A stretch of DNA of 64,000 nt, from sequence record MK250028.1; one strand, given 5' to 3'. Shown piece by piece: positions 2,420 to 60,833 of this stretch (its first letter is position 1; every line of letters starts with the position of its first letter). A program made the translations under genes and the position numbers. Below the pieces are notes generated by a model. It saw only the letters and a program-made list of their open reading frames with translations. It ran no database searches and was not told the DNA's origin.

Positions 2420-3442
2420 TTAAATTCTTGAAAAATTTTTAATAATTGAATTTATACGTTTTGTATGTTTTAATTGTTGTTGTGTAGTTGGCCATTTAGT
2501 ATATCCTCTGCTAAACCATGTATGAACAGCAATTAAATTTGTATCATAAAATTCATTTTTAATATCATTGCTATATATCGCTGATGTTAATCCTGATAAA
2601 TCAAATGTACAATTATTTTTTACAAAATCTGAATCATATAAATCTGTACCAAACAAATAATATATAGGTGTATCAGATAAAATTACTAACGCTTGCTCCA
2701 ATATATAATATGGTTCAAAATTAGGTTCTTCTTCATCTTTATAACTATATGGAATTTGATGGGGTTCAATTTTATTATCAGGATCATCTCTTACTGTTTT
2801 ACAATAAGGTGTCTCATGATTTGGTAAATCAACTCTTGTTTCTCGAAATATCTTTGCATTAGAAATCATTTTCATTGATTCACCATTCATATACTTATAT
2901 AAATCTTTATCTTTATTGTTTATTAATTTATTGATAAATTCTTTATATAAAGTATTAGGATTTTTCTCAAATTCGTTTGATATATATGTAATTATATTAT
3001 TAAAAGAAATATTTTTATCTCTTAATAATTTAATATTCCAAAAACTTAAAAAAGTATTAATCATAAAACGACTATGATTCCTATGACAAAATACCCCACC
3101 ATCTTGAGGACCTGCTATACAACAACCACTTTGTACAAAATTCTTAAATTCTTTTATTAAAGATTCAAAATCATTAATAAAACAATCCTCATCTATATAA
3201 ATTACATAATCAAAATTTTTATTAGATAACATATAACTAAACATTAATAAAAATGCATCTAACCCATAAAATGGCTTGTTATCTTTTATACCTGGAATAA
3301 CCCAAAAATTTTGAATAGGTATATATTCTATATATGTCTTTAATGACGGTATTAACAATGAACTAGGTAAACATATTGAATTTGTTACAAAGCATACTTT
3401 ATTCTATGATAACCATGTTTTAATCTCTACTATATTATCCAT
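2420..3442 (-). CDS. Putative glycosyltransferase (DxD type)
   Basis: YVIYIDEDCF motif; ATG at 3442 reached by reading one TAG as Gln (MDNIVEIKTWLSQNKVCFV). Confidence 0.6.
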
Positions 3443-7592: not shown

Positions 7593-8531
7593 TTATAAAT
7601 TAAATTGTTCTTTAATTTTATCCCATTTTCTATGTAATATATCAGAACATTGTATAGCATAATTATATAATTTAATAACATCATTTTTCCTTGAAAAATA
7701 TGCTTGTATACAACCATGATTATCTATACGAAGATGAAAATTAATATTATAATACTAATCAATAATATCAAATAATTCAACATATAATGGTTTCCAACTA
7801 ATATGATTACTTATTGATATTGATATACCTGTTCTTGATTTTGAAATACAACCATCACCATCTAAAAACCCTATTAAAAAATATATTAAATACGTTTTAT
7901 CATAGAATATAGAAATATTTGGTGAATTATATGTTTTCTACTTATCAATCAGATTAAATATTTTTTTCCATTTTTCACAAAAACATTTATCTCCTATACG
8001 TATACTACAAGTTGTATATTTTCCAAAAGTTGAATCTGCTTCACGTTCTCGAATAGTAGTATTTAACCTATTAGCTAATAACTAAAGATTATTTTTATCT
8101 CTATTTGAAATAGAAATAATAAATTCATTTTTTTGTGATATACAACCATCTGCTATAAAAAATCCCCACCAATAATAGACTTCCTTATTATTTAAATTAT
8201 TCATAAAACTTAAGTTTCCGTGTCTACGTCTATCTATATTATGAGGAAATTTCATACGTTCACACGCTTGAAATTGTATAGCATTATAACTAAGAGTTGG
8301 AAATGCATCTAATAATTCCTATTTAGATGCATTATACCATAACTCTTTTAGTTTTGCATTATTTTCATCAGTCCATTTAAAATTACAATGTATTTGTAAC
8401 TCATGTGCTTTTTTCTTTATAGCGCTTTTTGTTCTATTTGGTAATAAATTAATACATTCAGTTAATCCTGATATAGGATAATACTATTTTAATATATTAA
8501 TTTCATTTTCATTCCAAAATTTATACTACAT
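7593..8531 (-). CDS. Free-standing two-motif LAGLIDADG homing endonuclease with N-terminal Myb-like repeats
   Basis: Open only under code 15 (6 TAG, the first at codon 2); motifs WWGFFIADGCI and FLIGFLDGDGCI; absent from ORF track. Confidence 0.85.
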
Positions 8532-15418: not shown

Positions 15419-15424
15419 ATATAG

Positions 15425-15498
15425 CAGGCCTGATGAGATTCGAACTCACAACAACATGATTAAAAATTCGTGTGCTCTACCAATTGAGCTACAGGCCC
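15425..15498 (-). tRNA. tRNA-Lys(TTT)-like with 8-nt anticodon loop
   Basis: GGGCCTG/CAGGCCT acceptor, GCTC-AATTGGTA-GAGC D arm, CACGA-ATTTTTAA-TCATG anticodon arm, GTGAG-TTCGAAT-CTCAT T arm; no encoded CCA. Confidence 0.8.
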
Positions 15499-15914: not shown

Positions 15915-17129
15915 ATGAATAAGAATTATAACAAACTATATGAAGAAATGATGTCAGATATTTCAGTTATCGTTAAAAAGAAAATAAATGAAGCATATGA
16001 CAATCAGCTTCTCGAAGAATATGGTGCAAAGGATATGTTTAATGATATTATGAAAGAAGCATCAAAAGAAGGTAAAATCTTTTATAAGCATCTTAAATAG
16101 TTTATAATTTATATCATCAAAAAATTACAAGAGACAGATCAATATAAAAAAGCTGAAAAACTTATGAATGCGTATGTTCAGAAAGTACAGAAATATATTG
16201 ATGAACATAAGAAGATTACTCCGAGACGTATGTTGAAAATTACTGTTGCTGTATTGACAATGTATGGAGGTGTTTCAATGATACAAGATTGTAAATAGAT
16301 GATTAAATCTTTATAGGGTAATGTTGAAACTTATGAATAGAAAGTAGAAAATGTACCGGATGAAAAGCAACAAGAAGTAATAGTAGAAGAACCTGAAGAT
16401 TTTGTTGTTGAAGTTAAAGATGAAGCAAAAGAAAAATTAAGTGTCAAGAAAGTATCTACTGAAGATATTAATAATACACCTGAAAAGAAATTTAAGGAAG
16501 ACAAGAATTTCAATTTTAAGTCAAGCAACGAGGCTCGCGAATTTATTAAACATCATGAGTTATGCTTACTTTACCCTTATTACGCAAAACCCGAAGAGGA
16601 AGCGAAAGGAATGGTAACTATTGGTTATGGTCATGTTGTATTGGAATCAGATGGTGAATTATACAAGAAAGTATAGCAATTAAAAAAGAAAGGCTTAATT
16701 AAACAATCATTTGTTACAAAAAATGGTAAAACTATTTTAAACCCTAATCATTGTAAAACCATTATAACAAAGACTGACGCAGATAAATTATTTTAGAAAG
16801 ATATTAAGATTGCTGAATAGCGTGCATATAGAACTATACAAAATATGCCAACAGATGATGATAATGTTAAATATTATATGTTATATAATCAAAAAATAAG
16901 AGATGGATTAACATCATTATGTTATAATGCTGGATAGCTTAAACATGAAAAATATACATTCATAACAAAAGGTCTTGCAAAATCTAGATATGATTATCAA
17001 GCATAGAAAATAAATGCAGGTGATTATAATGTATCCTTTAAATATTTCAAGAATATTAAAGATAATCCTAACAGAAGAAATGAGGAATATAAGTTATTCT
17101 TTATGAACGCAAATAAGTCTATGTCATAA
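15915..17129 (+). CDS. GH24-type phage lysozyme with long N-terminal extension and leader
   Basis: Open under code 15 (9 TAG); FIKHHE..Y..GMVTIGYGH, LTSLCYNAG and RRNEE motifs; ATAAATA at 15872. Confidence 0.8.
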
Positions 17130-18555: not shown

Positions 18556-19812
18556 TTAAAATCTTATAAATGAAACTACTTTTGCTTTTACATTTGGATC
18601 TGCAATCTTAAATACCTTGTCAGGATTTACCTATAACATAATATTCGATTCACCTTTATCTGTAACAGAAGAAGTCCAATATCTTCCTGAACCAATAATA
18701 TCTTCAACTTTATTTAATTCTGGTAAAGTTGGCAAATATGCATGTTCTGTAATTTCTTGTTTTACCTCATTAATTTGTGCATCATTCAAACCGGTTAAAT
18801 TCAACTTCTTCATAGGTAATGATTTGGCAGCAGAAGCGGCATTGTTACCGTTATCAGAAAGAATGTTTGTATAGAATTCTCCTTTAACTTCTTCTTGATA
18901 ATAATAATTTGATCCTGCTGTAATCTATAATTTCTAACTAGCACCAACTAATTTCTTCTTGAAGTAATAATCATCATATACACCATTATTTCCTGCATTA
19001 CCTAATGTTACTGTTTCATCACTCATAACCATAAATACAGGTTTCTTATCTAATGTCTTATATGTAGTTAATACGCACTTAGCTATTGCATTCTATGCAT
19101 CATTACTTAATACCAAACCATCCTTTTCATCCCATACTAAGAAATCACCGATATTTGCTTTCCTTAATGAATTACCAACTGTTTTAAAGTATGGTTTCAT
19201 ACTATCATACTTTTCACCTATTGTTATAGGTTCTTCATCAATATCATCTTCCATAGATACATCATCATAATCTGGATAATCATTAGATGTTTCTTCTGAA
19301 TCGATATTATCATCTTCTGAATTATCAACAACAGGTTCTTCATGTTGTTTAATAGAATCATCAAAACCTCTACTTACTTTAACTGGTTCATCAACAACTT
19401 CTGGTTCATCATTTACTGTATCATCTGTTGAAACATCATCATAATCTGGATAATCATGCTTTACAGGTTCTTGTGAAATTTCACCATCAAATTTACCACC
19501 ATTTTCAACATATAATTTCTATATTGATGTTATATCACCACCTGCATTTATATATGCGTCACCAATATTTTTATATGCTTTCAACTTATCAATATCAGAA
19601 ATATTATGTGGACATTCGACTTTCATAGTAAGCAAGCCTGCAACATATTTCTGAAGAAGGATTTCCTTTGAGTCTTTCTTCATAACTCGGGCATCTTCAC
19701 CTAATGTTGAACGCATACGACTTGACATAGAACTCATAGAAGCCCAAATCTTCGGATCTATTGTTCTCTATACACGTGCTTCGTTTAATATATTATTTTT
19801 AAATGTTCTCAT
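18556..19812 (-). CDS. Hypothetical late protein; acidic linker, C-terminal DUF1566-like motif
   Basis: Open under code 15; starts MRTFKNNILNEA; DYPDYDDVS repeated twice; YLPTLPEL..GRYWTSS at C-terminus. Confidence 0.7.
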
Positions 19813-19992
19813 TTAATATTAAAATAATTATTTTACTTATGATATTTATCTTTTATAATAAAATAAGAGATTTAGAATTAAATAATTCAATTATAGCATA
19901 TTCATACAAAAATAGGAGTAAACATAATTATCTTATATTTACTCCTATGTATTTAAATTATTTATTATTCTAAATCAAAAATTGCCTTAAAA

Positions 19993-21777
19993 TTAATTAA
20001 GTTCCAACCAAGTTACACGTTTGTCAAGTTTTGCAACAAGTTTTGCAAGAGCTTCGATTGTCTTCTCATTGTATACATCAATTGATTTCTCTACATCTTC
20101 GCCAGCAAACTGAACAGTATAAGTTGTCTTACCGCCTGTAACATTAAGAGCAAACTCCTCATTAACATCTGCTTCTGCAGGAATTGTAATTGCAACATCG
20201 TTATCAGCAGAATTAACAGCAACTGCCTTATTTTCAACTGTTTGTAAACGTGTTTCGTGATCATTGAATGCATCTGCGATTACCTCTTCATCAGATACTA
20301 ATTCACCAGCAACATCAGCTGCAGTAGCAAGACCTGTTGCATTATTATTTGTACCTGCAACCCACTTACCAGAATTTGTATTCTTTGTAAGACCAACTGA
20401 ACCAAGAGCAGAAGTCTTAACTTCAACTTCATGATTATCAACTGCAACAAAATTCTCAGAACCAGTCTTTACAGAAAGTGTAGGAAGTTCTGTACGTACT
20501 ACTTTAATCTTACCATTTTCCTGTGAAACTGAAGATACATACTTACCTTCTTCTGCTGTATCTGTAACATCAAGTGCTTCAATTGCAAAAGTTGCAGCTT
20601 TTTCTGTAGTCTTGATAGACTTAGCTAAACTTGCAATCTGTGCATCAACCTTATCACCTTCAACAGCAACAGTATCATCAGTTGCAACAATAGCTTCAGC
20701 TGCAACACCATTAGCTTCAAGATTAGCAGAATCAACAGTCAAATTACCATCTGCATCAACATGTACACCAGTTACATATTTACCATCACCTGCAGTTGCA
20801 TCACTTACAGCATGTTTCTTAGCTTCAAGATCTTCCAATCTCTTATGAATACCAGTAGCTGCTGTGCTTGCATCAGACGGTGTACCAATTTCTGCTTTAT
20901 TATGAGCAACATCTGTAATAAGTTCTTTACCGGTTTCAGTTTCATCTACCTCTTTAAACCAATCAATAACTTCAACTACCTTATTGATTACATTATCTTC
21001 ATCAGGATTCTATACATCACCCATAATAGTTTCAATATTAGTGACACGTGTATCTAACTTACCTTCTGCTGTTGTTGCACGATCTGCTTCTTTAGCAATC
21101 TTTCCAAATGCAGTTTCCTAAGTCTTATCATCATCAACAGTGCCAAGAAGTTCTGCGGAAGCAATGTCGTCCTCTGAAATGGTTACTACTTTCTTATCAG
21201 AAACTGCAACCTTTACATGACCAGCTTCTTTCTTTTCTACAGTTGTATAATCAGCATTCTCAAGATCATCAATACGATCTGAAAGTTCACCTTCTGCAGT
21301 TGTAGCACGGTTTGCTTCCTTTGCGATAGCGCCAAATACAGTATCTACATCCTTTGAATCTGCTTTAGTTCCAACAGTTGTTTCCAATGTAGAAACTCTA
21401 TCAGCAAGACTCTTAAGTTTAGCATCAGCTGAAACAGGAATATCAAGAGTCTTAACAGTCTTATCTGTATCAACATAAGAAACAGTAACTGCTGCTTCAG
21501 ATTTAACTTCACCTGTAGTTTCATCAATATTAGCAGGAGTAGATTTAATATTTAAAATCTTTGAAGAAACAACCTTACCACGAGCAACGATAGCGCCTGT
21601 ATTATTTGCTTCATCATAACCAAAATAAATAACACCATCGTCAGGAGTTCCTACTTTTTCAAGTACCTTATCAAGTGTACCATAACCAAAGTTTACTTCT
21701 ACACCATCACCAGCAATAGGAGCACCAAATACAACAGGAGTATTATCCTTCTTTGATTTCTTAATTGTAATAGCCAT
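19993..21777 (-). CDS. Putative virion structural/fibre protein, paralog 1
   Basis: Joins two track ORFs through 2 TAG; AKEA.RATTAEG repeats; ATAAATA upstream. Confidence 0.7.
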
Positions 21778-21896
21778 ATTATTAATTAAGTTTTATATTT
21801 TATTTTTTACTATAATATTTATTCAAAAAAATGGAGAAACATTAATAAAAACGTTTCTCCATTATATTAAAAATTAATTACTAAATTCTGTTAAAA

Positions 21897-23441
21897 TCAG
21901 AGTTCTTCCCATGTCAAAAGACCAGCAAGATATGTGTCATTTGCTTGAAGTTGATTTAATGCGGTATTTAAACCTGTATAGAATGTTTCATTAGCGACAT
22001 CAACTGTTACTTCTGCTTCAACACCGTCCTTACTTGTTGTAAGTTTCAATGTATTGAACTGTTTGTTATCTGCTTTAGGAGCTTCAAGTACAGCATCCTT
22101 TACATATGAAGCTTCAATAGCATTAACAGAAGCATCAGTCTTTTCAAGATGAGCACCAATTGATGTATCTTCAGCTTTAAGTTCATCAAATGTAGACTTG
22201 ATTCCAAGAGAAGTATCAACATATGTTGTTACAGCATCTGCATCAAGTGATACAATACCATTCTCTACCTTAATATACTTACCATCACCCTTGAATGTTT
22301 CAAAAATTTCTGTAAAATCAAGATAAACATCAGAATCTTTCGCAGATTCAGTTTTTGACGGTTTTGTATTAAGAGCAAGGTGTAAATATGAATGACCATA
22401 TTTAATCTTAAATCCAAGACGTGCTTGTTCCCATGTACCATCCTGATTCTCTGACCATGGAAGCATTGCTGCAGATGTTACTTCATCACCGTAATTAACA
22501 GTTGCTGAATTACCCCATTGATCTGAGTCACTACCATATACAATTTCTGGGCCTCCTTCTTTAACATACTTAAATGTACATACATGTGCGCCAGATACCA
22601 AGAAATCCTTAGCAATATTGATCTTATCACCAACAGGAGAAACTGTGCCATCAGGAGCAGTTTGCATTAATTGATATTCAGCTGCATATGTTTTCTCGCC
22701 ATCAGTTTGTTCCATCTGATCATCAGAAACTTTCTTAATTGCATATGTAGAAACTTTAAGTGCATCATCAACAACCTTTACTGTTGTATCATCAACTTTA
22801 ACACCTACTGTATATGTCTGATAATCATTAGCATCCTTTGCAGGAGTTACTTCAATAGCACCATTAGCTGCTTCAGAAACAACATCGCTCTTAAGATGAG
22901 TTTCAATACCGGATACCGAAGTATCTAAACGAGTAGTATCTTCAGTATGATGTGCTTTCAAATCATCAATCTAGTTCTGAAGATTAGATTGAGCTGCTTT
23001 AATCAATTCCTGAACAGTTGCAGTATCAATAATATCAAACTCTGTTGTCCATGTCTTCGTCTTTGTTTGATTATCAACAGGATCTGTTGCACTACCGAAC
23101 CATTTAACCATTACCTTATCAGCAACTTTCTCTGTTGTAGATTCTACATATTTACCTGTTGATGGATCAAAATGTTTCTTTGCAACCTCATTTGTTGTAA
23201 TATCAAGGATCTTAGAAGATACAAGTTGATTACCAACAAATATCATACCGGAATCACCAGCAGCGTCATATACAAAACGTAATTTAGCGTCTGAATCATG
23301 AGCATCATAAATACTAATCACTTTGTCTTCATCAAACGCACCACTCAAAAAATGTACTTCCTTACCTGCAATAGTTGCATCAGCAACCTAATCTGTTAAC
23401 TTTGTTGCTTCACCAGCACCATAAACCATTTTATTTGTCAT
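21897..23441 (-). CDS. Putative virion structural/fibre protein, paralog 2
   Basis: Joins track ORFs through 2 TAG; shares VSSKIL.I block and C-terminal TWEEL with neighbours. Confidence 0.7.
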
Positions 23442-23493
23442 ATTAAATTTTTATAGATTTAATTTTAATATTTATTAATGTTTTAAAAAATTA

Positions 23494-24459
23494 TTATTTA
23501 TATATCTCTTCCCATTTCAATTGGTCTTCCACAATAGTCAATCTATCATTAATAGATGAATCTGTATTCATGAATTCATTTATATGTGAATCATAATCTT
23601 TAAGATCTAATGTAACTGTCTTAATAAGACTACTGTCAAGTGAATGTGTAACATCCTTAATTACTGTACCATCTTTCAATGTCAATACACCTTCAACTAA
23701 ATCAATCTTATCAATAGGTTCAGGCCAAATTTTCGCTTCAATCTTATTTGAATCCTTAACATAATTAAGCTGTTTCAAAACCATGTCAGTTACTTCAATC
23801 TTAGATGAATCTGTTTGTTCTTCATCACCTTTAAATAAAGTGAATGTTTGTTTGAAACCATTCTCATATGTACCTGAATCCTTATGAATTGTATAATTAT
23901 ATTTGCCTTTATCTAAATCATCAATCAACTATACATAAGAAGTATCTATAGTATTGACTCTATCAAAAAGAGTATCAACAGAAGTATCTATAAATGTAAG
24001 ATGTTCATTTATATCTGTAATAGAAGTATCAATAACATTTAATCTTTCATATACATCATTAAATGAAGCATTCATTTTTTCTGTAATAGAAGAATCAAAC
24101 TATTCTAGTTTTTCTTTTACTTCATCTAATTCTTTCTACGAAACAATATTTGTTTTTACAGTTGCAAGTTTACCAGAATCATTTACATATTTGAGAGATA
24201 AAGTTACAACACCATCTACTGAAGCAAGAGATATATCTTTAACTTTAGATGTAAGTTCAAGATCACCCAAGAAGATACCTGTAAGCAATTCTGAATTCTT
24301 AGACTTACCAAAATACAAAGTATGTGGATCCTTATTCTTAGTATTTACAATATCAACATAACGACCTTCTATGAACTCAACTTCATCATGTGGTTTACAT
24401 TTTTTATTTGGGTCAAAAACATGTAATACATGCTGAGGTGGACGTATATCTTTATTCAT
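23494..24459 (-). CDS. Putative virion structural protein, paralog 3
   Basis: Joins track ORFs through 3 TAG; IDTS repeats every 14 aa; C-terminal KWEEI; ATAAATA upstream. Confidence 0.65.
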
Positions 24460-24570
24460 TTAAATATAACATGTTATTTTTATTATTTATTATAAAATAA
24501 AAAATGAGTAATAATTATATATCATTATAATATAAAAGTATTACTCATTTTTCCAATATTTTATTTTCAA

Positions 24571-26778
24571 TTATTCATTTCTATTTATATTATATTTATC
24601 TAAAAGATAATTTGCAAAATCTTCTTTTTCCTATGTTTTATTATTAAATCTAAAAAAGAAATTAAGATTAAGACCTACTTTTCCACCTTGCAAATAATTA
24701 GTTGGCCAAAGTCTTACCATCTTATTCATTACATATTCCTCTATTGTCTTGAATCTATAATGATTTAACCTTGCGTTTTCCCATGTTTTTTCATTATCTC
24801 TTAATTTTATAGAATTTATACATAACTAACCTATTGTATTTACTGTAACTATTTTTTTACTATATGGCGAATCATATAAAATGCCATGAGGTGAATTAAA
24901 TTCTATATTATCTACACATGTTTTAAATATTATTTTAGTTTGAGTAGACCAATTTTCTGTAATAGGTAGATAATCTGTAAATCTTTTAATTGAATAATTA
25001 TTATCTTCTACTTTTAATATTTCTGAATCTGTAAACTATCTCCAGCAAACTCTTATTGTATTAATTCCTCTATCATTAAACATATCATTAGATAAAAATT
25101 CATGTATATCATTACAATCTAATTCTAAAAATTCATCAATATCGAAATATGCGATCCAATCATATTTGTCTTTGTATATATTATAGCAATCTGTATATGA
25201 TGGAATCTAAACCAATTCTTTCCCTCTCTAATCTTTTAATATTACATATCCAGAATTTATATAATCAGATATTACATCTTCAAAATGTTCGCCATCAATA
25301 TCATTGTTATCATATAAAACAATATTATCAAATCCTATTGATTTATGATGTTCAACAAATTCTCTTATATAATTATTTTCCATTTTTCCTATACAGCATA
25401 ATAAGATCTTTCCTGTATATTTTTTAGGTTTATTATATAAATTCAAATGATTTAATTTTACTGGGCATACATCAATTAATTTCTACAAATCAATATCATA
25501 TGTTGAATCATAGTTATTCTTTAATTTCAATAAATCATCTTCTGTTGTTTCTTCTGTTACTAAATATGAATCATATAATGGTTTATGAATAGATAAAAAG
25601 AAATCTTCGAATTTAAAGTCCTATCCTATATTTTTACCTATACTAATCCATATATTTGGAATCCTATATGCTTCTGAAATAATCAACCCATGTAAACTTT
25701 CTGAAACAATAAATTCACATTCTTCTATATTTTTTATTATATCTTTCCAATCATTATATTTTGTAAAATCTATTATTAATATATCATCATTATCTTTAAA
25801 TTTATTTAATATATATGATTTAATATGTGAATGATGCGGAATAATTCCCAACTTATATTTTTTCATTACATATGGTTGATAATAATATGGAAATAATAAT
25901 GCTGGATCCCCATAAACTTTTGGGCAATTTATATTTAATTCCTATAAGTAATCCCTTGTTTTGGGACCTCTCACTGCATATATTTTATTTGGTTTATTTT
26001 TTAAATTATGTTTATATAAGAAACCACTCCCCCATATTTTTGTAAAATCATCTATATATTCATCACATAAAATAGAGCCTATGAATATATAATTTATTTT
26101 CTTATCTTTCTTATTATATTTTTTATGTTGTTTACCTGTAAGTTCTTTTAAAAAAGAAAAATTTATATCATCACCAAAGTTATGTGGTATTACTGTATTA
26201 TCAGAATTTAAAAATGCCCAACTATTTAAATATATAGTATCATTCTCGTTCTTCATAATTTCGCTATTTAATTCTTTTTGAAATAATGAATTCGAAGTAT
26301 TATTTTTCTTCAATACATTTACAACTTCAGTATTAATTTTATTTTCTTTTTCCTTTTTTATTTTATCTTTAAACTATTTACTATTAATAATAACATTTTT
26401 ATTTTTAATAATATCCTATTTCTCTTTAAGAATTTCCTAAATTGGTTTTACTTTAGACTCAATAGTAGGTATCATGATATTGGAAACATAAGCATACGTT
26501 TCCTTATTTGTTTTTATATTGTTAATATTAATTTTTGTATTATTTCCTTTATGTTCTTTTTCTTTATTATCATAATTAACAAATGTTTTCATATTAGGTT
26601 TCGTAACATTACCTAATATGTACTTATCAGGATTATATGTACCTTGTAACTAATTTATATTATTAGTCACTGATGAGAATCCGTCCTAATTATAATAAAC
26701 ACCAGAATTCTAGGCGTAACTTCTATTTTTTGAAAAATATGCTTTATCTATCTTCTATACATTTTTAATTGGAAACAT
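24571..26778 (-). CDS. Polysaccharide pyruvyltransferase + GT2/GT92-like glycosyltransferase fusion
   Basis: 735 aa under code 15 (about 15 TAG); NFGDD, WGSG, AVRGPKT, GDPALL, SESLHG; then ENNYIREFVEHH..GFDNIVLYDNND and YDWIAYFDIDEF. Confidence 0.8.
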
Positions 26779-26902
26779 ACAGATATAAAATTATTTTAAT
26801 ATATTTATTTTAAATAGAAAAGGATAGACTATTCTCTACGAACAATCTATCCTTAATTTAATATGAAAAACCCGAAATTAAGTTTTGAACTTAAGTTTAT
26901 AT

Positions 26903-28162
26903 TTACTTATTCACTGCAAGAATTGCACATGAACTATTAACAAGAAGATTTACATTTCCCTTAAATTCATTAATAGTTCTCTTATCTGTATAACTCATTG
27001 CAGATCGCATATAATCAATCATATTATCAGTCCACTGTTTTACAGTTTCCTTCACTGTAATATACTTTGTACAACCTTCTGAAGTCTTTGTTTTTGCAGA
27101 TGGATTAATTAACTTTTGAGCCTTCTTTGTTGACATTCCATAAGACTCCTTTGTAATAGTCTTCATATCCTTAATAAAGTCTTTTTTCTGTTTTTCAAGT
27201 TCATCTGAAATAACAGGATTTTCAGAATTTAATCCTTCCCAAATATTAAGAATGTCTTCTACTCCATTATTAATAATACCATCTTTATAAAAATAAAGAT
27301 AATGATTATTATAACTTTCAATATTCAATGGTGCTGTTGACTCAAGAAGTCCTGTAAACAAACTTCCAATCATTACATAATCTGCACCAAGACCCAATGC
27401 TTTAATTACATCTGCATAACCACGAATACCACCATCTGCAACAAGGTAAGGATGTGACTTAAAATAACTTGTTGGATTATCATTTTCATCAAATCCCTTG
27501 TCAGCAATATTCTTATAATATTTACACTTATCAATCAATGATGCAATAGGATAATGAATTGAAGAATTTGAAGTAGTTAAACACACGGATCCGCTTCCTA
27601 TAGACAGTCTGATATAGTCCACGCGAGCATGCTTACAAATCCACTCATAAGTTTCAGGATTAGCGATATTACCTGTCATTACAATGAGTTTATAATTACT
27701 ATTATCAGCAATATCCTTTGCCTTATTAATAGTCTCATACAAACTTTCCATATGGCCATTTGCTAAATCCACACAAATCCTATATGTTCGATTATATCCA
27801 GAAAATATTTCATCAGGTGACATCATCTTATGATCAACAAAAACATATTCAAACTCTTTCAATGACAATGCAACCCAATCGCCATCATCCATAAATGGTT
27901 TAATATATTCCATACGTTTTACAATATCACCATTTGGATCTGCTCCTATATTTCGTGGAATCATTGGATGAATCTTATTCAACTTCCAAATGTTAATATT
28001 ATATTCATTCGTAATAGTAGACATAGGTGCAGTAAACAGTGGAAGATACTTATCATCTTCCACAAATGGATTACATTCCTTTCTACTCTTAATTGAACTA
28101 ATAACAGCAGGTTCAATTGTCAAATCATTATATGAATACTTTGTATCTTTAATAATCGGCAT
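26903..28162 (-). CDS. IMP dehydrogenase / GMP reductase family protein (no CBS domains)
   Basis: PLFTAPM, DLANGH, LSIGSGSVCLT catalytic loop, ADGGI..KALGLGADYVMIGS, YGMS, MRSAMSY. Confidence 0.9.
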   Translation of the reverse strand: MPIIKDTKYSYNDLTIEPAVISSIKSRKECNPFVEDDKYLPLFTAPMSTITNEYNINIWKLNKIHPMIPRNIGADPNGDIVKRMEYIKPFMDDGDWVALSLKEFEYVFVDHKMMSPDEIFSGYNRTYRICVDLANGHMESLYETINKAKDIADNSNYKLIVMTGNIANPETYEWICKHARVDYIRLSIGSGSVCLTTSNSSIHYPIASLIDKCKYYKNIADKGFDENDNPTSYFKSHPYLVADGGIRGYADVIKALGLGADYVMIGSLFTGLLESTAPLNIESYNNHYLYFYKDGIINNGVEDILNIWEGLNSENPVISDELEKQKKDFIKDMKTITKESYGMSTKKAQKLINPSAKTKTSEGCTKYITVKETVKQWTDNMIDYMRSAMSYTDKRTINEFKGNVNLLVNSSCAILAVNK

Positions 28163-28198
28163 TTTTATTCTTTTATTATTTCTAAATATTATATATAA

Positions 28199-28402
28199 TT
28201 AAATACTCTTTGTCTTATTAATTACCATTGTAATAAAATCATGTCTCTCTACATAATCCTTACTCTGACAATCATGTTTTACCAACAGATATGCATCGAT
28301 AACTTTCTCTATAAAATCATGATCGTATCGTTTTTCAAGTCCTTCTTCAAAACCTGTTTCATATCCATTATTATATTCTTCTTGCAAATCTTTTTCTGTC
28401 AT
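28199..28402 (-). CDS. Hypothetical protein
   Basis: 67 aa ORF. Confidence 0.55.
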   Translation of the reverse strand: MTEKDLQEEYNNGYETGFEEGLEKRYDHDFIEKVIDAYLLVKHDCQSKDYVERHDFITMVINKTKSI

Positions 28403-28425
28403 AATTATATTACTGTTTTATTTTA

Positions 28426-28971
28426 TTACCAAAATACAATAGGACTATCACTTTGATTAGTAACCAATAATCTTCTATTAGTTGGACAAGATGGATAATC
28501 ACTCAATCGATGAACACCGCCTACCATCATTCTTCTAGAATCTGAACATCCATAATGTGGTTGACAAAAATCATAATGAATACGAATAAACTTAAAATCA
28601 TCATTAACTTCTACTGATGTAATAGACAATGAATCAATATTAATATAGTGAGAATTTTCAATATTATTATTCAAACTATTATTATGCATCTTAATCCATT
28701 CCATATCATTCTTAATAGCCGAAGTTAAATCAATACTCAAAAATACAGAATATGTATCTACAATCTCTGGAGATTCATGGTCTGCTTCTGTAAAGAAATC
28801 AAGAAATACTCGTTTATCGATTATATCACCTTTCTTATATTCATCACGCATTGTAGCTACATGATCAATAACTAAATCACTCTTATTCTTTGATTTATTT
28901 GAGTCTCCATGTTCATCTACCCATTTGATATACATGCCTCCTCTATTCTTAGGATAAAAAACTTTTGTCAT
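28426..28971 (-). CDS. Hypothetical protein
   Basis: 181 aa ORF. Confidence 0.65.
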   Translation of the reverse strand: MTKVFYPKNRGGMYIKWVDEHGDSNKSKNKSDLVIDHVATMRDEYKKGDIIDKRVFLDFFTEADHESPEIVDTYSVFLSIDLTSAIKNDMEWIKMHNNSLNNNIENSHYINIDSLSITSVEVNDDFKFIRIHYDFCQPHYGCSDSRRMMVGGVHRLSDYPSCPTNRRLLVTNQSDSPIVFW

Positions 28972-28981
28972 AATTTTTATT

Positions 28982-29158
28982 TTAATCAGTTATATATTTT
29001 GCTTTATAAGTTTTATAATTATTAATAATATTAATCCATTCTTCTTTTGTAAGTCCAGTTATTTCACAACCTTTTTTATAATCAAACATATTAATTTCTC
29101 CAGACATTTGAAGATGATAATATGCATCAAATTTCTCTTCTGTAATTTCTACTTTCAT
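28982..29158 (-). CDS. Small protein, DUF5049-like
   Basis: 58 aa MKVEITEEKFDAYYHLQMSGEINMFDY..GLTKEEW..I..NY; SG..NMFD motif; not in ORF track. Confidence 0.55.
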   Translation of the reverse strand: MKVEITEEKFDAYYHLQMSGEINMFDYKKGCEITGLTKEEWINIINNYKTYKAKYITD

Positions 29159-29170
29159 ATATTAATTATA

Positions 29171-29587
29171 TTATTTGTTATTATTAATCATATCAATAAG
29201 TTTACCGACATTATCATAAAGTGTTCCCAACTCATAAAATGCCATAAATTGATTTGATACTTTATGATATGTAGGATTACATACATTTATATCAATGAAC
29301 AGATTTTCACAAAGGTTTGAAATATACATTGATTTCTTATCTTTCTTCTTCGATATTTTTTCAGCTAATGGTTTCAATCGAGAATTTGCAAACTTAATTA
29401 CGTCATTATAATAATTTACAATGCCCTGTTCATACTCATAATCTGATACATATACAGTATTCTTATTTAATGTAAGAACATAATAATCAGAACACATATC
29501 AGATGTTCGTGTTACATGTAATTTATTATCTGCATTTGCAATTACACACATGAATGAAAGAACCAATGTTATAAATATATGTTTCAT
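29171..29587 (-). CDS. Hypothetical exported protein
   Basis: Signal-peptide-like N-terminus; class I promoter at 29625. Confidence 0.65.
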   Translation of the reverse strand: MKHIFITLVLSFMCVIANADNKLHVTRTSDMCSDYYVLTLNKNTVYVSDYEYEQGIVNYYNDVIKFANSRLKPLAEKISKKKDKKSMYISNLCENLFIDINVCNPTYHKVSNQFMAFYELGTLYDNVGKLIDMINNNK

Positions 29588-29656
29588 TTTATATTATTTT
29601 AAATTATTGTTTTAATTAACAATACAAAGATACATATTTTATTTTGAATAAAAAAA

Positions 29657-29920
29657 TTAATATGAAATTATTTTACTAATTTGTGAACAATATCCAAACC
29701 ATTCTTTACCTTTATATATAACACAGAAATCTCCATTTATATTAAGAACTCGTTGACCAGCAGAATTAAATACTGCTATAATTTCGCAATCGACAAAACC
29801 TTTATCACCTCTATCTTCGTTCATTAAATGAATATTAATAATAGTTCCAACACGAATATCTCGTATAGTGAAATGCTTTTTATCAATATCGTCTTTATTA
29901 TTTTTATTAAACTTAATCAT
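29657..29920 (-). CDS. Hypothetical protein
   Basis: 87 aa; class I promoter at 29947. Confidence 0.6.
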   Translation of the reverse strand: MIKFNKNNKDDIDKKHFTIRDIRVGTIINIHLMNEDRGDKGFVDCEIIAVFNSAGQRVLNINGDFCVIYKGKEWFGYCSQISKIISY

Positions 29921-30043
29921 ATATTATTTTATTAATGTTTATATAACAAAGATACATATAATTTTATAAAAAAGAAAAAGAGATACTATAAAAATACAGT
30001 ATCTCTTTAAATTAAATTATTAATTAAACTTTCTAAAAACTTA

Positions 30044-31087
30044 TTACTTTACAGTAACAATAGCAACACGACCAAAATCATCATCCATACCATGACCTGT
30101 AGCATCAGTTACCTTAACACCACGAGACTCAAGATACTTCTTAACTGCTGTTGCACGAGCATCAGACAATGCCTTATTATGCTTCTTAGTACTCTTAGGT
30201 TCCTGAGATGCATAAGCGTCTACAACTACAGTTGTTCCTTCAGGAATTGCATCAAGTACGGACTTACACTTTGCACTCAAATTTGAGCTATTAAACTTAA
30301 ATGGTGCAACAAATACATTCTGTGCAAAACCACTTGCATTTGTAACAGGTTTCTCTACAATCTTCTCAATTACCTGTGGCTCACGAGACTCAAGTTCATT
30401 AATCTTTTTATTAAGAGCATCAACCTCTGTCTGATCATAAAGTTTTGCCTTTGCAAATGAACGTGTTCCATTTGAATTCTTGAAACGATAAACAACACCT
30501 GCAGTAATCTCAAAACTACCATTCTTCTTTACAAGCTTGCCATTATCAATATCATTCCATACAACAGAAGGATTTACGACAATACCCCATGCACGCTCCT
30601 TACCAAGATTAAAATTAAACTCTGCACCAGCACGATAAGTCATCCAGTTATTATGATCTGCACCATAACCTGCTGTCTGATGACCCCAACCAAGACCTGT
30701 ATAAACAACAGGTTCAAAGAACTTACGTGTTCCATCAAACTTAAATACATTAGCAAGATTTACCTTACCATAACCACTTACATTTACATAATCAAATGCA
30801 GTGTATGTATTATAACTACCATGACCTGTTCCAATAAGTGTACGACCTTCAATACCAAATCCCAACCATGGTGTTACATACTTATCTGCACCAACTACAA
30901 TAATAGGTGCCATTGCTGTATGACCACTATAGAAATTGTCAAATGATGTAAGAACACCACCCTGAAGTGTTACTGAAACATTATCAGTAAACTTACTAGA
31001 ACCTGCATAATCATTCTGTACCTGTGCATTAATTGTACCAATTGCAAATGTAAACATTGCAATCAACATAAAAATAAACTTCTTCAT
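30044..31087 (-). CDS. ompA: OmpA-family outer membrane protein (Bacteroidota type)
   Basis: Signal peptide, beta-barrel-like N-domain, C-terminal OmpA domain AYAS..HNKALSDARATAVKKYLESRGV; no TAG. Confidence 0.9.
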   Translation of the reverse strand: MKKFIFMLIAMFTFAIGTINAQVQNDYAGSSKFTDNVSVTLQGGVLTSFDNFYSGHTAMAPIIVVGADKYVTPWLGFGIEGRTLIGTGHGSYNTYTAFDYVNVSGYGKVNLANVFKFDGTRKFFEPVVYTGLGWGHQTAGYGADHNNWMTYRAGAEFNFNLGKERAWGIVVNPSVVWNDIDNGKLVKKNGSFEITAGVVYRFKNSNGTRSFAKAKLYDQTEVDALNKKINELESREPQVIEKIVEKPVTNASGFAQNVFVAPFKFNSSNLSAKCKSVLDAIPEGTTVVVDAYASQEPKSTKKHNKALSDARATAVKKYLESRGVKVTDATGHGMDDDFGRVAIVTVK

Positions 31088-31362: not shown

Positions 31363-32496
31363 TTATAAATTAATTTGTCTTAATCCTTCTGATAAAATAT
31401 TCAAAGAAGCATTATAATCTCTATCTATTAAAGATTTACAATGTGGACATATCCACTTGCGCTAACTTAGTTTTAAATCTTTATAAATATATCCACAATT
31501 ATGACATGTCTTTGATGAAGGATAGAATCTATCTATTATAACTAAATTTTTATTATACCTATTACACTTATATTCAAGTTGTCGTCTGAACTCAAATAAA
31601 CTTAATTCCTATATGGACTTAGATAGTTTATGATTAGACATCATACCATTTACATTTAAATCTTCAATACAGATAACTTGGTTCTCATTAACTAGTTTTG
31701 AAGTTATTTGATGTAAATAATTTAATCTCTAATTCTTTATTTTCTCATGAACTTTTGCAATTTTAACTCTTACTTTATTTCTATTAATACTGTCTTTCTA
31801 TTTCTTAAATAATTGCCTCTATAATTTCTTTAATTTATTTTCTTGATTTTTATAAAAATGCTTATTCTCATATCTATTTCCATTTGAATCAACAATAAAA
31901 TCTTTAATTCCTAAATCTAATCCTATTACATTATCTAACTTTTCTTTTTCTTTAATATTATAATCAATACATATTGATAGATAATATTTGTTTGTAGAAG
32001 TTTTAGTAAGAGTAACAAAATGAATTTTATCTTGATTATGATTTAAATATATTTCATCTTTTCTTGAACACTTAAATAATATATTTTTTAACTACTTTAT
32101 TAAAGTTATTCTATTTCCTCTAATTTTTTTATTTTTAAACTTAAACATTGAATTAGTAAATCTGCAAGATTGTTTAGCATCTTTTTTAGATTTGAATTTA
32201 GGATAATATGTATATGATTTTAAAAAATTATCATATGCTTTAATTACATCTATCATTGATTGCTATAAACATGCATTATATACATCATTTAAAAAAGAAT
32301 ATTCATCTTGCTTCCTTAAAGAAACTAAATATTTACCTAACTATGATAAAGAAACAGATTGCTTATATTGTTTATATATTAATTTTTTATAATCTAATAA
32401 TTTATTATATATAAATCTACAACAACCTAATTGTTTAGAAATAAATTCTTTCTAAGCAACATCAGGATATATTCTTATTTTAATAGATTTGATCAT
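31363..32496 (-). CDS. tnpB: IS200/IS605-family RNA-guided endonuclease TnpB, intact, no tnpA
   Basis: 377 aa under code 15 (8 TAG); HTH N-terminus, RuvC D (GLDLG), E (IEDL), D (DRDYNA), Zn ribbon CHNC/CPHC. Confidence 0.9.
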
Positions 32497-32565
32497 ATAC
32501 AATAAAATTATTTATATAATATAAAATTAACTTCTTAAAAAGTTTACATTTTATAGAAATATTTT

Positions 32566-35311: not shown

Positions 35312-35796
35312 NNNNNNNNNNNNNNNNNNNNNNNNNNNNNNNNNNNNNNNNNNNNNNNNNNNNNNNNNNNNNNNNNNNNNNNNNNNNNNNNNNNNNNNNN
35401 NNNNNNNNNNNNNNNNNNNNNNNNNNNNNNNNNNNNNNNNNNNNNNNNNNNNNNNNNNNNNNNNNNNNNNNNNNNNNNNNNNNNNNNNNNNNNNNNNNNN
35501 NNNNNNNNNNNNNNNNNNNNNNNNNNNNNNNNNNNNNNNNNNNNNNNNNNNNNNNNNNNNNNNNNNNNNNNNNNNNNNNNNNNNNNNNNNNNNNNNNNNN
35601 NNNNNNNNNNNNNNNNNNNNNNNNNNNNNNNNNNNNNNNNNNNNNNNNNNNNNNNNNNNNNNNNNNNNNNNNNNNNNNNNNNNNNNNNNNNNNNNNNNNN
35701 NNNNNNNNNNNNNNNNNNNNNNNNNNNNNNNNNNNNNNNNNNNNNNNNNNNNNNNNNNNNNNNNNNNNNNNNNNNNNNNNNNNNNNNNNNNNNNNN
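35312..35796. other. Assembly gap (485 N)
   Basis: Run of N at the switch from minus- to plus-strand genes. Confidence 1.
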
Positions 35797-36937: not shown

Positions 36938-38047
36938 ATGAGAAAATATTTTGAAGTTCCTGATATTATAACTGATGATTTTATTATATAGAATTTTAAA
37001 TTAAAGAATACAGAAAATGATATTAATCCTAGTAGGACAAGTAAGATATTTTTAAATTAGTATCCAACTATTAAAGAATATATAGAAAATAGATATGTGG
37101 ATTCAGAATCCATATATGAAACTTTTTATAGAATATTTCATCATATTGAACATAGACCTAAATGTAAGGCATGTGGTAAAGTTTTAGAATTTCATCATAA
37201 CCATAAATTTAGAGAATATTGTTCATAGAAATGTGTATAGAATTTTGAAGATGTTATATAGAAGAAATCAAAAACAAGAAAAAGAAAAGTAACAGAATAT
37301 AAATATTTGGGAAAAGATTTTTATCAAGAAGTTAGGAAGAAAATAGAAGATACCTGTTTAAAAAGATATGGTACAAAATATCCTACGTAGTGTGATGAAA
37401 TAAAAGAAAAAGTTAAGCAAACTAATATAAAAAGATTAGGTGTTCCATATACAGCTTAGAATAAAAAGTGTTTAGAAAAGATGAAGCAAACCTGTATAGA
37501 GAGATATGGAGTAGACCATAATTTTAAAATTCCAGGTATGAAGGAACATATTAAGGAAACTTGGATTGAAAAATACGGTTGCGAAAATCCTATGTAGAAT
37601 AAAGATATATTATAGAAAAATTTTGATTCAAAGAAAAAACATAATTCATACAGATAGTCAAAATCAGAAGAATCATTACATGAATATCTTTGTAATAAAT
37701 ATGGAGCAAATGATATATTAAGATAGTATAAATCTGATTTATATCCATATCATTGTGACTTTTATATTAAAAGTTTGGATTTGTATATTGAATTGCAAGG
37801 TTATTGGTCACATGGTTATCATCCATTTAATCCTAATGATAAAAATGATATTGAACGTTTAAATGAATTAATGTTAAGAAAAGATAAAACAGGTTATTCA
37901 CATGCTATTGATGTATGGACTGTTAGAGATGTCAATAAGAGAAATACGGCAAAAGAAAATAATTTAAATTATTTGGAACTATTTGCAGTTAAAAAAGAAG
38001 ATTTAATTAATAAATTTGAAGAATACATAAAAAATAAAAAAATTTAA
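36938..38047 (+). CDS. Putative free-standing homing endonuclease (Zn finger + K.T...YG repeats + PD-(D/E)XK-like domain)
   Basis: 369 aa under code 15 (about 11 TAG); CKAC..YCS..C; TCLKRYG/TCIERYG/TWIEKYG repeats; YPYHCDFYI..LYIELQGYWSHG. Confidence 0.7.
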
Positions 38048-59888: not shown

Positions 59889-60833
59889 ATGAAAGATAAG
59901 AAAATATTAATATTAACGATGTGTTGTAATCAAGATTTATTCTAGCAATAGGAATATAGATTACGAACATAGTTATATGCTAAAGATATATTAGATAATA
60001 AATACGATAATGTAGATTATTGGACATATACTGCATCAACAGATGGTAAATATCATGTAAATAAAAAATTACATAAAATAGAAGTTCCATGTGATGACAC
60101 TTTATATGGTACATATGATAAGACATATAAGGTATTTAAATTATTAAATCAACTTAATATAGAATATGATTATATATTAAGAACAAATTGTTCAACATAT
60201 ATTAATATTCCATTATTAAAGTTATTTGTAAATAATTTAAATAATTATAGATTAATATATTCAAATTCTATATATTGTAGTAAAGACGGATGTGGGCCAT
60301 ACCAATGGAGTTTGTATGGATTAGGGAATTCATTGTTGTTATCTAAATTTTGGGTTTCTATTATTATAAAAAATAATGTTAATAATCTAACGAAATTCAA
60401 TTATAATAAATTATCAACAGATTCCGTTTATACTGTTGATGATAATGCTATAGGATTTACAGTGAACTGTTTTTGCTTGCAGAATAATTGGGATATATGT
60501 GATATATGGAAATCATGGAAAGCACCATTACAAAACAAAATACCGGTTCAACCATATAATTATATATGTATTCCTTTTAGAGAATATAAAACAAGAGAGA
60601 ATGAAATAAAAAATTCATTATTTATACATGATGAAATAACTAAATATAAAGATGGTTATACAAATGAATATGTAAATAGTTTATCAGATAACATGTGGTT
60701 TCATATATTGGATTTTGAACAAGGCATGCATTCTATAGTTGATAGAAAATTAGGTGAACAATTTATGGATTTTGTATATGTTCCGAGATATATAGAGAGA
60801 ATAAAAGAACAAGAAAATAAAGCATAGAAATAA
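59889..60833 (+). CDS. Putative glycosyltransferase (GT31/Fringe-like)
   Basis: Code-15 ORF; TYDKT..EYDYILRTNCSTYINIPLL; true stop TAA overlaps the next ATG (TAATG). Confidence 0.6.

What the first reader, a model, noticed from the sequence alone, without database searches (positions are those of the whole stretch)
24571..26778. Late, TAG-rich pyruvyltransferase-glycosyltransferase fusion next to structural genes: possible virion glycan coat
Seen: one 735-aa ORF joins a pyruvyltransferase and a GT2/GT92-like domain, has a class III promoter and sits directly upstream of the structural triplet. Two more GT-like genes lie at 2420 and 59889. Established: pyruvylated fibril glycans are known from Megavirinae giant viruses, and capsid glycosylation from some mycobacteriophages. 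Inference: a gut megaphage building a pyruvylated glycan on its particle or remodelling the host surface.
Basis: partly seen in the sequence, partly recalled or inferred. Interest (0 to 1): 0.65.

Follow-up and report, generated by a model that had tools for sequence, protein, structure and literature searches.

The report
Late phage glycan-capping fusion enzyme
A Lak gut megaphage carries a probably late-expressed enzyme that fuses a sugar-adding and a pyruvate-adding domain; it is a swappable cassette that probably puts acidic caps on a glycan of the virus particle or of its Prevotella host. The gene was already reported, and its target remains unknown.

Summary
The window is Prevotella phage Lak-B1/B9. 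The ORF at 24571-26778 (-) is real. It gives 735 aa only if its 15 TAG codons are read as Gln. It has three parts: a disordered N-terminal extension, a polysaccharide pyruvyltransferase (PvT) domain and a GT92-type GT-A glycosyltransferase domain. All catalytic motifs are invariant.

Crisci et al. 2021 already described this protein as a core, two-domain Lak protein.

New findings here:
- The PvT+GT92 pairing forms one clade that occurs in other huge-phage contigs in both domain orders. Its sister group is the pyruvyltransferases of Bacteroidales capsule loci.
- In one Lak variant, at the same locus, the PvT domain is replaced by a Stealth sugar-phosphate transferase, while the flanking parts stay 98-100% identical.
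- Lak-B1 and Lak-B2 diverge only across the catalytic domains.
- A hairpin followed by an ATAAATA motif 27-30 nt before the ATG is conserved in 8 of 9 relatives. The same motif precedes the capsid and endolysin genes.

The best reading is a late, cytoplasmic, two-step enzyme that adds an anionic glycan cap. Its acceptor is unresolved: virion protein about 0.4, host envelope glycan about 0.35. The "structural triplet" could not be verified. The gene at 59889 is a GT-A enzyme. The gene at 2420 is unconfirmed.

The parts
24571..26778 (-). Fusion gene, 735 aa (P0001), with 15 in-frame TAG=Gln codons
26227..26778 (-). N-terminal extension, aa 1-184. It is K/N-rich, predicted disordered, has no TM segment or signal peptide, and is conserved among Lak phages.
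   Evidence: pLDDT <50. The first ~137 aa are identical between the PvT and Stealth alleles. The first ~280 nt are 100% identical between B1 and B2. Hydropathy.
25444..26226 (-). Polysaccharide pyruvyltransferase domain, aa 185-445, GT-B-like fold
   Evidence: PF04230. Invariant N200-x-G202-D203, R270...T274 and H363 match the WbbZ motifs. Fold Z ~13 to UDP-GlcNAc 2-epimerases.
24574..25431 (-). GT92-type GT-A glycosyltransferase domain, aa 450-735, with the D546-x-D548-E549 motif
   Evidence: PF01697 and PF13704. Best structural match is GalS1 8D3T, Z 16.1. The DxDE motif aligns to GalS1. Invariant residues.
26820..26854 (-). Terminator-like hairpin (15 pairs plus a T-run) that separates the fusion gene from the TAG-free IMPDH-like gene
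   Evidence: An analogous hairpin is present in Lak-A1/C1, L001, L094 and L002.
26802..26808 (-). ATAAATA, a motif like the T4 late promoter, 30 nt upstream of the ATG
24498..24550 (-). AT-rich inverted repeat plus T-run after the stop codon (seen by eye, below the scanner's G+C threshold). It is followed by ATAAATA at 24484-24490 for the next gene.
23494..24459 (-). Downstream 321-aa protein, coiled-coil-like, 3 TAG. Synteny is conserved in relatives.
21897..23441 (-). Downstream 514-aa protein. It is A/V/T/D-rich, has no signal peptide, and is a paralogue of the 594-aa protein in its N-terminus. Function unknown.
19993..21777 (-). Downstream 594-aa protein. It lies in a region of raised G+C and has no signal peptide. 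Function unknown.
59889..60833 (+). P0266, a second glycosyltransferase-like gene with a GT-A fold nearest to GT31. It has N-C-S where GT31 enzymes have DxD, and 4 TAG.
   Evidence: Its domain sits next to the fusion gene in L001.
2420..3442 (-). P0268, a claimed GT-like gene. Only a DxD-like motif is present; it is unconfirmed.
26903..28162 (-). Upstream IMPDH/GMP-reductase-like gene, no TAG
30044..31087 (-). OmpA-like gene with a signal peptide and no TAG. Its homologue lies directly upstream of the fusion gene in L094.

Best explanation
P0001 is an active, cytoplasmic, late-expressed two-step glycan-capping enzyme.

Proposed mechanism:
- The GT92-type GT-A domain takes a host nucleotide sugar and adds one residue to an acceptor glycan. 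UDP-galactose is the likely donor by analogy with every characterised GT92 (inferred).
- The fused pyruvyltransferase domain uses phosphoenolpyruvate to convert that residue into a ketal-pyruvylated, negatively charged cap (inferred from family chemistry).
- The gene is a self-contained transcription unit: a terminator hairpin, a T4-late-like ATAAATA element, the gene, then another hairpin. Its 15 TAG codons should allow translation only once the phage's amber-suppressing system is on (inferred).

The catalytic part behaves as an exchangeable cassette. It occurs as B1-type and B2-type PvT alleles and as a Stealth sugar-1-phosphate-transferase allele, all behind the same N-terminal extension. 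The product is therefore a variable, surface-type anionic epitope.

I rate a phage-made acceptor, meaning virion-associated proteins glycosylated in the cytoplasm during assembly, as slightly the most likely target. The conserved disordered N-terminus would act as the docking piece. The enzymatic part I hold at about 0.8 and the virion target at about 0.4.
For: Shown:
- Both domains score above the Pfam cut-offs.
- The AF2 model has pLDDT >95 for aa 180-735.
- The GT92 domain matches GalS1 with Z 16.1, and the DxDE motif aligns.
- The three pyruvyltransferase motifs are invariant in 27 fusion proteins.
- There is no TM segment or signal peptide.

Late signature:
- TAG density is the highest class in the window.
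- The hairpin plus ATAAATA 27-30 nt before the ATG is conserved in 8 of 9 loci.
- The same motif precedes the capsid and endolysin genes.

Cassette behaviour:
- P0030 lies at the identical locus and has Stealth in place of PvT, with flanking parts 98-100% identical.
- B1 against B2 is 66-88% identical only within 24,650-26,500, inside flanks that are 96-100% identical.
- The two domains stay paired in both orders, in single clades on both trees.

Evidence for a virion-side target:
- It is a core gene in at least 49 of 51 Lak genomes.
- Synteny with the non-secreted 321/514/594-aa genes holds in a relative that is ~60% identical.
- The N-terminal extension is specific to the phage versions.
- Signal-less BspA/DUF285 adhesin-like genes lie next to the fusion gene in 5 relatives.
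- The genome has no Bac_transf, Wzx, GT1, GT2, epimerase or NTP-transferase.
- The best viral structural matches are multidomain pyruvyltransferases of giant viruses.
Against: - No characterised PS_pyruv_trans or GT92 enzyme initiates on a protein. They extend or cap existing glycans, so a separate initiating transferase would be needed. Only candidates exist: P0266 and the GT25 gene.
- The sister clade is made of capsule-locus enzymes of Bacteroidales, found next to Wzy, GT1 genes and an acyltransferase.
- The only tested phage GT+PvT pair modifies host O antigen.
- The neighbours are not shown to be structural, and the capsid gene is 155 kb away.
- DUF285/PARCEL genes travel with mobile DNA, so their adjacency may be incidental.
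- Late timing is inferred from sequence only. No RNA run holds this stretch.
Confidence: 0.4

Rival explanations
1. Host-envelope remodelling. This is the same two-step chemistry, but the acceptor is a host undecaprenyl-linked capsule, O-antigen or O-glycan intermediate at the inner face of the membrane. The host's own flippase and export machinery then display the pyruvylated or phosphosugar-capped glycan. The cap would mask receptors from competing phages or from progeny released onto debris.
For: - The nearest cellular relatives are pyruvyltransferases in Bacteroidales capsule loci.
- A functional wbbY-wbbZ pair on a phage genome caps Klebsiella O antigen with pyruvate.
- Secreted OmpA-like and 138-aa proteins are encoded 2.4-3.3 kb upstream, and the OmpA-like gene is directly adjacent in L094.
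- Lak phages express outer-membrane proteins.
- Allelic hypervariability fits tracking of host serotype.
- The phage lacks its own initiating and export genes, so it would have to ride on host pathways.
Against: - The late-type promoter and heavy TAG use are odd for exclusion functions, which are usually early or lysogenic.
- It is a core gene across Lak phages from many animals and hosts, although Prevotella surface glycans are highly variable.
- The conserved phage-specific N-terminal extension has no counterpart in the bacterial enzymes.
- None of the best 80 GTDB loci carries the fusion.
Confidence: 0.35
2. A target that is not a surface glycan: sugar hypermodification of phage DNA, or modification of a nucleotide, lipid or small metabolite.
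For: - In Cobetia phage Carin-5 the lone pyruvyltransferase sits among DNA and nucleotide-metabolism genes.
- Nucleotide-metabolism genes flank the fusion gene here and in L002 and L004.
- Phage glycosyltransferases that modify DNA are well known.
Against: - DNA-protecting enzymes must act early, whereas this gene carries the late signature.
- No pyruvylated DNA base is known (my own knowledge).
- Huge phages are full of nucleotide-metabolism genes, so adjacency is weak evidence.
- The PvT-to-Stealth swap is typical of surface-polymer chemistry.
Confidence: 0.07
3. A passenger gene captured from the host, with no role in the phage cycle or already decaying.
For: Both domains derive from bacterial families. 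TnpB elements and homing endonucleases lie nearby.
Against: - It is core in Lak.
- Catalytic residues are invariant across 27 divergent fusion proteins.
- It is fully rewritten in the phage's TAG code.
- A conserved promoter-like element is present.
- The domain pairing is kept through a permutation of order.
Confidence: 0.03

Closest known systems
WbbY-WbbZ O1-antigen locus of Klebsiella, and its functional copy on a Caudovirales genome (Kelly et al. 2023, PMC10629545)
   Same: A glycosyltransferase works together with a PEP-dependent pyruvyltransferase that caps the terminal galactose. The locus is phage-borne. The same NxGD, Rxxx(S/T) and H motifs are present.
   Different: There the two proteins are separate, and the transferase is a two-module polymerase. 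Here there is one polypeptide with a GT92 domain, a long N-terminal extension, a late/TAG signature, and an unknown acceptor.
Mimivirus/Megavirinae fibril glycan clusters (pyruvyltransferases L143 and Mg538)
   Same: A virus-encoded pyruvyltransferase lies beside glycosyltransferases. The best BFVD matches to the model are giant-virus pyruvyltransferase proteins (33% identity).
   Different: Giant viruses also encode the nucleotide-sugar pathways and the fibril protein in the cluster. Lak-B1 has none of these, and the glycan on its particle is unproven.
Mycobacteriophage virion glycosylation (Freeman et al. 2023, cited)
   Same: Phage transferases use host sugars to decorate capsid and tail proteins in the cytoplasm.
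   Different: The enzyme families differ, and no pyruvylation is involved. There the glycosylation was shown by mass spectrometry; here it is only inferred.
Bacteroidales capsule-locus pyruvyltransferases (e.g. the locus in Bacteroides sp. KFT8, L040)
   Same: They are the sister clade of the PvT domain, at 38-46% identity.
   Different: They are single-domain proteins set among Wzy, GT1 and acyltransferase genes. They have no GT92 partner and no N-terminal extension.
Plant GalS1 and other CAZy GT92 galactosyltransferases
   Same: Best structural match (Z 16.1), with the DxDE motif aligned.
   Different: About 15% identity. The donor and linkage are unknown here.
Stealth (CR2) hexose-1-phosphate transferases of bacterial capsules
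   Same: A Stealth domain replaces the PvT domain in allele P0030. It is fused as well in P0065-67 and lies adjacent in L001.
   Different: It is absent from Lak-B1 itself.
S. pombe Pvg1p/Pvg3p pyruvylated-galactose cap (from my own knowledge; 5AX7 is mentioned)
   Same: A galactosyltransferase plus a pyruvyltransferase make an acidic terminal cap.
   Different: They are separate eukaryotic Golgi enzymes. Here the partner transferase is GT92, and a GT31-like gene lies elsewhere in the window.

Membership tests
Polysaccharide pyruvyltransferase (Pfam PF04230) | Profile match above the curated cut-off | tested here: met
   59.2 bits against a cut-off of 25.3, aa 207-379. There is a single copy in the 548-kb genome.
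Polysaccharide pyruvyltransferase (Pfam PF04230) | Conserved motifs NxGD, Rxxx(S/T) and catalytic His, as defined on WbbZ/Pvg1p | tested here: met
   N200/G202/D203, R270...T274 and H363 are invariant in 27 fusion proteins.
Polysaccharide pyruvyltransferase (Pfam PF04230) | Two-Rossmann GT-B-like fold resembling Pvg1p/WbbZ | tested here: inconclusive
   The domain matches UDP-GlcNAc 2-epimerases at Z ~13, the same secondary hits reported for WbbZ. However, 5AX7 and 6X1L did not appear in the rows listed, and the domain was not folded alone.
Polysaccharide pyruvyltransferase (Pfam PF04230) | PEP-dependent ketal transfer to a sugar | not testable with these tools
   Needs an enzyme assay.
CAZy GT92 / Pfam PF01697 | Profile match above the cut-off | tested here: met
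   59.9 bits against a cut-off of 23, aa 462-647.
CAZy GT92 / Pfam PF01697 | GT-A fold closest to a solved GT92, with the DxD(E) metal site | tested here: met
   GalS1 8D3T: Z 16.1, rmsd 3.9 Å over 210 residues. D546-x-D548-E549 aligns to GalS1 D-V-D-E and is invariant.
CAZy GT92 / Pfam PF01697 | Galactosyl transfer from UDP-Gal | not testable with these tools
   Inferred only by analogy.
Phage virion-glycosylation systems | Transferase genes linked to proven structural genes, and glycans present on virion proteins | tested here: inconclusive
   Synteny with the 321/514/594-aa genes is conserved, but these have no structural annotation, and the capsid gene is distant. Glycans are not testable.
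Giant-virus-type autonomous glycan clusters | The virus's own nucleotide-sugar synthesis genes | tested here: not met
   No Epimerase or NTP_transferase in the whole genome.
Autonomous lipid-linked polysaccharide pathway | Initiating phosphoglycosyl transferase and flippase | tested here: not met
   No Bac_transf or Polysacc_synt. No GT1 or GT2.
Code-15 (TAG=Gln) recoded late genes of Lak phages | The frame is open only with TAG read as sense, and TAG alternates with CAA/CAG at conserved sites | tested here: met
   The code was reported for Lak phages. No suppressor tRNA lies in this window.

The most novel reading that the evidence does not exclude
Lak megaphages coat a virion component with an acidic glycan whose terminal chemistry is allelic: pyruvate ketal in two divergent versions, or sugar-1-phosphate through a Stealth domain. 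Recombination swaps this chemistry at a single hotspot. The result would be a serotype-like variable glycan coat on a gut phage of a Gram-negative host, analogous to giant-virus fibril glycans.
Probability: 0.3. Interest if true: 0.75.

Novelty: new variant of a known kind. Interest (0 to 1): 0.5.

Why it matters
Virus-made glycans are known from giant viruses and a few actinobacteriophages, and phage-borne O-antigen modifiers come mostly from temperate phages. This gene is different. It is a core, late, hypervariable pyruvyl/phosphosugar capping cassette in the largest gut phages.

If it acts on the virion, it would reveal a glycan coat that could affect mucus binding, recognition by the host animal's immune system and host range. 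If it acts on the host, it would be a new way for virulent megaphages to rewrite Prevotella surfaces during infection.

The question is now testable, because the allele series (B1-type PvT, B2-type PvT, Stealth) provides natural variants.

Tried and rejected
After that I sent them to no outside tool and analysed them only in local scripts, so their fold is unknown.
- Pfam, PHROGs and tblastn gave nothing for the three downstream genes.
- A single-sequence search of PDB found nothing.
- The first profile was too diverse for the genome scan, so I re-ran with A2.
- No RNA run holds the stretch, so read laying was not used and expression timing is untested.
- Complex prediction was not used, because it accepts only code-11 proteins and the candidate partners carry TAG codons.
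- The supplements of Crisci et al. held no entry for the gene.
- Stealth, GT1, GT2, epimerase, NTP-transferase, Bac_transf and Wzx are absent from Lak-B1.
- I rejected the idea that the neighbours are the main head module, because gp23 lies at 52-54 kb of the genome.
- I rejected the claim that the fusion is 'Lak-specific', because it occurs in other huge-phage contigs.
- The Mimivirus R699 fold hit is a collagen glucosyltransferase and only reflects the generic GT fold.
- The run of N near 35.8 kb was left untouched.

Full report
**Identity of the window.** Bases 19,000-31,000 are 100% identical to Prevotella phage Lak-B1 (MK250020.1, about 204,980-216,980) and to Lak-B9. Lak phages are ~540-kb gut megaphages that read TAG as glutamine (Devoto et al.).

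**The observation.** Under table 11 the region 24571-26778 breaks into short ORFs. With TAG=Q it is one 735-aa ORF on the minus strand with 15 TAG codons.
- Across seven phages, TAG alternates mostly with CAA. Gln524 is TAG in all seven and Q in more distant homologues whose genetic code I did not check.
- Fifteen of its 21 Gln codons are TAG, at 20.4 per 1000 codons, which is among the highest in the window.
- Pfam gives PS_pyruv_trans (aa 207-379) and Glyco_transf_92/Glyco_tranf_2_4 (aa 462-647), both far above their cut-offs.
- An AlphaFold model built on 103 sequences is very confident for aa 180-735 (pLDDT >95, pTM 0.79) and disordered for aa 1-178.
- The C-terminal domain is a GT-A fold closest to the GT92 galactan synthase GalS1 (Z 16.1), with the DxDE metal motif aligned.
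- The middle domain is GT-B-like. Its best hits are UDP-GlcNAc 2-epimerases (Z ~13), the same secondary hits reported for the pyruvyltransferase WbbZ.
- The three pyruvyltransferase motifs defined on WbbZ/Pvg1p (NxGD, Rxxx(S/T), His) are invariant in 27 fusion proteins, as are D546/D548/E549.
- The protein has no signal peptide or membrane segment.

Both domains therefore look catalytically competent and cytoplasmic.

**Prior knowledge.** Crisci et al. 2021 listed exactly this protein as one of three annotatable 'Lak-specific' core families (K13665; Glyco_tranf_2_4 plus PS_pyruv_trans; closest to Prevotella). The bare observation is therefore not new. Its function has not been addressed.

**Regulatory signature.**
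- The TAG-free IMPDH-like gene upstream ends in a 15-bp hairpin with a T-run (26820-26854).
- ATAAATA follows at 26802-26808, 30 nt before the ATG. This resembles the T4 late element TATAAATA (my own knowledge).
- An AT-rich inverted repeat follows the stop codon.
- The motif lies 30-45 nt upstream of all five consecutive genes from 18556 to 26778, of the endolysin gene and of two other TAG-rich genes. It also precedes the gp23-like capsid gene elsewhere in the genome.
- Enrichment within the window is modest (7/20 TAG-rich genes against 6/50 TAG-free genes, p=0.03).
- ATAAATA, in most cases preceded by such a hairpin, recurs 27-30 nt before the start of the homologous gene in Lak-A1, Lak-C1, Lak-B2 and five metagenomic relatives, 8 of 9 loci in all, although the surrounding sequence differs.

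Timing itself is untested, because no RNA run holds the stretch.

**Neighbourhood.**
- The three downstream genes (321, 514 and 594 aa) have no Pfam or PHROG assignment and only Lak hits.
- They are not secreted. They are A/V/T/D-rich and sit in a region of raised G+C. The 514-aa and 594-aa proteins share an N-terminal segment.
- The capsid gene is 155 kb away, so 'structural triplet' is unverified.
- Upstream lie secreted proteins, OmpA-like and a 138-aa protein. An endolysin gene lies nearby.
- TAG-rich genes in the window also include TnpB genes and homing endonucleases. TAG use therefore marks more than structural genes.
- Of the two further 'GT-like' genes, the one at 59889-60833 folds confidently as a GT-A enzyme nearest to GT31, with N-C-S where GT31 has DxD. 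The one at 2420-3442 has no profile support.

**Genome-wide inventory.** Lak-B1 has one PvT, one GT92 and one GT25. It has no GT1, GT2, epimerase, NTP-transferase, Stealth, Bac_transf or Wzx. It must therefore use host nucleotide sugars and PEP. It cannot start or export a lipid-linked polymer on its own.

**Evolution.**
- Of 176 word-indexed homologues, dozens keep both domains. In Lak and Lak-like contigs the order is PvT then GT92. In other contigs the order is GT92 then PvT, sometimes with an added GT2 or Stealth domain.
- Every context I fetched looks like a huge phage. That is only six lineages.
- On both domain trees the partnered domains form single supported clades. All 72 PvT domains have support 98, and the GT92 clade has 95.
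- The PvT clade is sister to single-domain enzymes of Bacteroidales. One of these lies in a classical Wzy-type capsule locus.
- None of the 80 best GTDB loci carries the fusion.

**Cassette behaviour.**
- Contig L093 has the same gene order: IMPDH-like gene, fusion gene, then the 321-, 516- and 593-aa genes. Its flanks are 76-96% identical to the window.
- Its protein P0030 carries a Stealth CR2 domain where PvT should be. Its first ~137 residues are identical, and its GT92 domain 98% identical, to the PvT allele P0006.
- Between Lak-B1 and Lak-B2 the flanks are 96-100% identical. Identity falls to 66-88% only across 24,650-26,500, which covers the catalytic domains, while the first ~280 nt of the gene stay identical.

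The locus is thus a recombination hotspot that varies the chemistry of an anionic substituent behind a constant N-terminal piece.

**Interpretation.**
- The chemistry I hold at about 0.8: add a sugar, then cap it with pyruvate.
- A virion acceptor is favoured by the late signature, the core status, the phage-specific N-terminal extension, the conserved linkage to non-secreted proteins, the signal-less BspA/DUF285 neighbours in five relatives, and the giant-virus look-alikes.
- A host acceptor is favoured by the capsule-locus ancestry, the wbbYZ precedent on a phage and the nearby envelope genes.
- My estimates are about 0.4 for a virion acceptor, 0.35 for a host acceptor, and small weights for DNA or other targets and for a passenger gene.

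Noticed in passing
window 15424-15498 (-): ARAGORN reports a tRNA-like gene with a four-base anticodon (tttt) and undetermined identity. It is the only tRNA call in the window, and no CUA suppressor is present here.
   Followed up: no
window 31363-32502 (-); 44769-45425 and 45450-45902 (+): TnpB/IS605 OrfB genes, the second one split, carry 9 and 8+4 in-frame TAG codons. These transposon genes are written in the phage's TAG=Gln code.
   Followed up: partly
window 7593-8531 (-) and 36938-38047 (+): LAGLIDADG-type homing endonuclease genes are also TAG-rich (6 and 11 TAG).
   Followed up: partly
window 15915-17129 (+): An endolysin gene (Phage_lysozyme) with 9 TAG has ATAAATA 42 nt upstream. It lies at the far end of the gene block that follows the fusion gene and converges on that block.
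   Followed up: partly
window 24650-26500 compared with Lak-B2 (L101): There is a sharp recombination hotspot. The flanks are 96-100% identical, the catalytic domains 66-88%, and the first ~280 nt of the gene 100%.
   Followed up: yes
L093 4150-6969: A Lak variant has a Stealth CR2 domain in place of the pyruvyltransferase domain at the same locus. Its N-terminus and GT92 domain are nearly identical to a PvT allele.
   Followed up: yes
L001 12788-15925; L094 6328-7236; L002 8924-9907; L004 12667-14040; L092 13882-14934: Signal-less BspA-type LRR/DUF285 (PARCEL) repeat proteins lie next to the fusion gene in five relatives. Lak-B1 has a single DUF285 gene, far away at ~500.9 kb of MK250020 (L103).
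   Followed up: partly
window 59889-60833 (+); L001 7986-9914: A GT31-like GT-A protein family has N-C-S instead of DxD and no Pfam model. In L001 the domain is fused to another DxD GT-A domain directly upstream of the fusion gene. The Lak genomes contain 2-3 places that match this protein (possible paralogues).
   Followed up: partly
window 29171-29587 (-) and 30044-31087 (-): Two TAG-free genes have clear Sec signal peptides: a 138-aa protein and an OmpA-like protein. They are phage-encoded envelope proteins close to the fusion gene.
   Followed up: partly
window 19993-21777 (-) and 21897-23441 (-): The 594-aa and 514-aa proteins share an N-terminal ~80-100 aa segment and an A/V/T/D-rich make-up that is unlike the K/N/I-rich bulk of the window. 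Local G+C is 33-35% against ~25%.
   Followed up: partly
MK250020.1 52.5-54.5 kb (L095-L097): The gp23-like major capsid gene has only one TAG codon, although 'structural genes are TAG-rich' is the usual summary. AGATAAATAT lies 61 nt upstream.
   Followed up: partly
window about 35,760-35,790: A run of N lies just upstream of the gene at 35853. It was left as it is.
   Followed up: no
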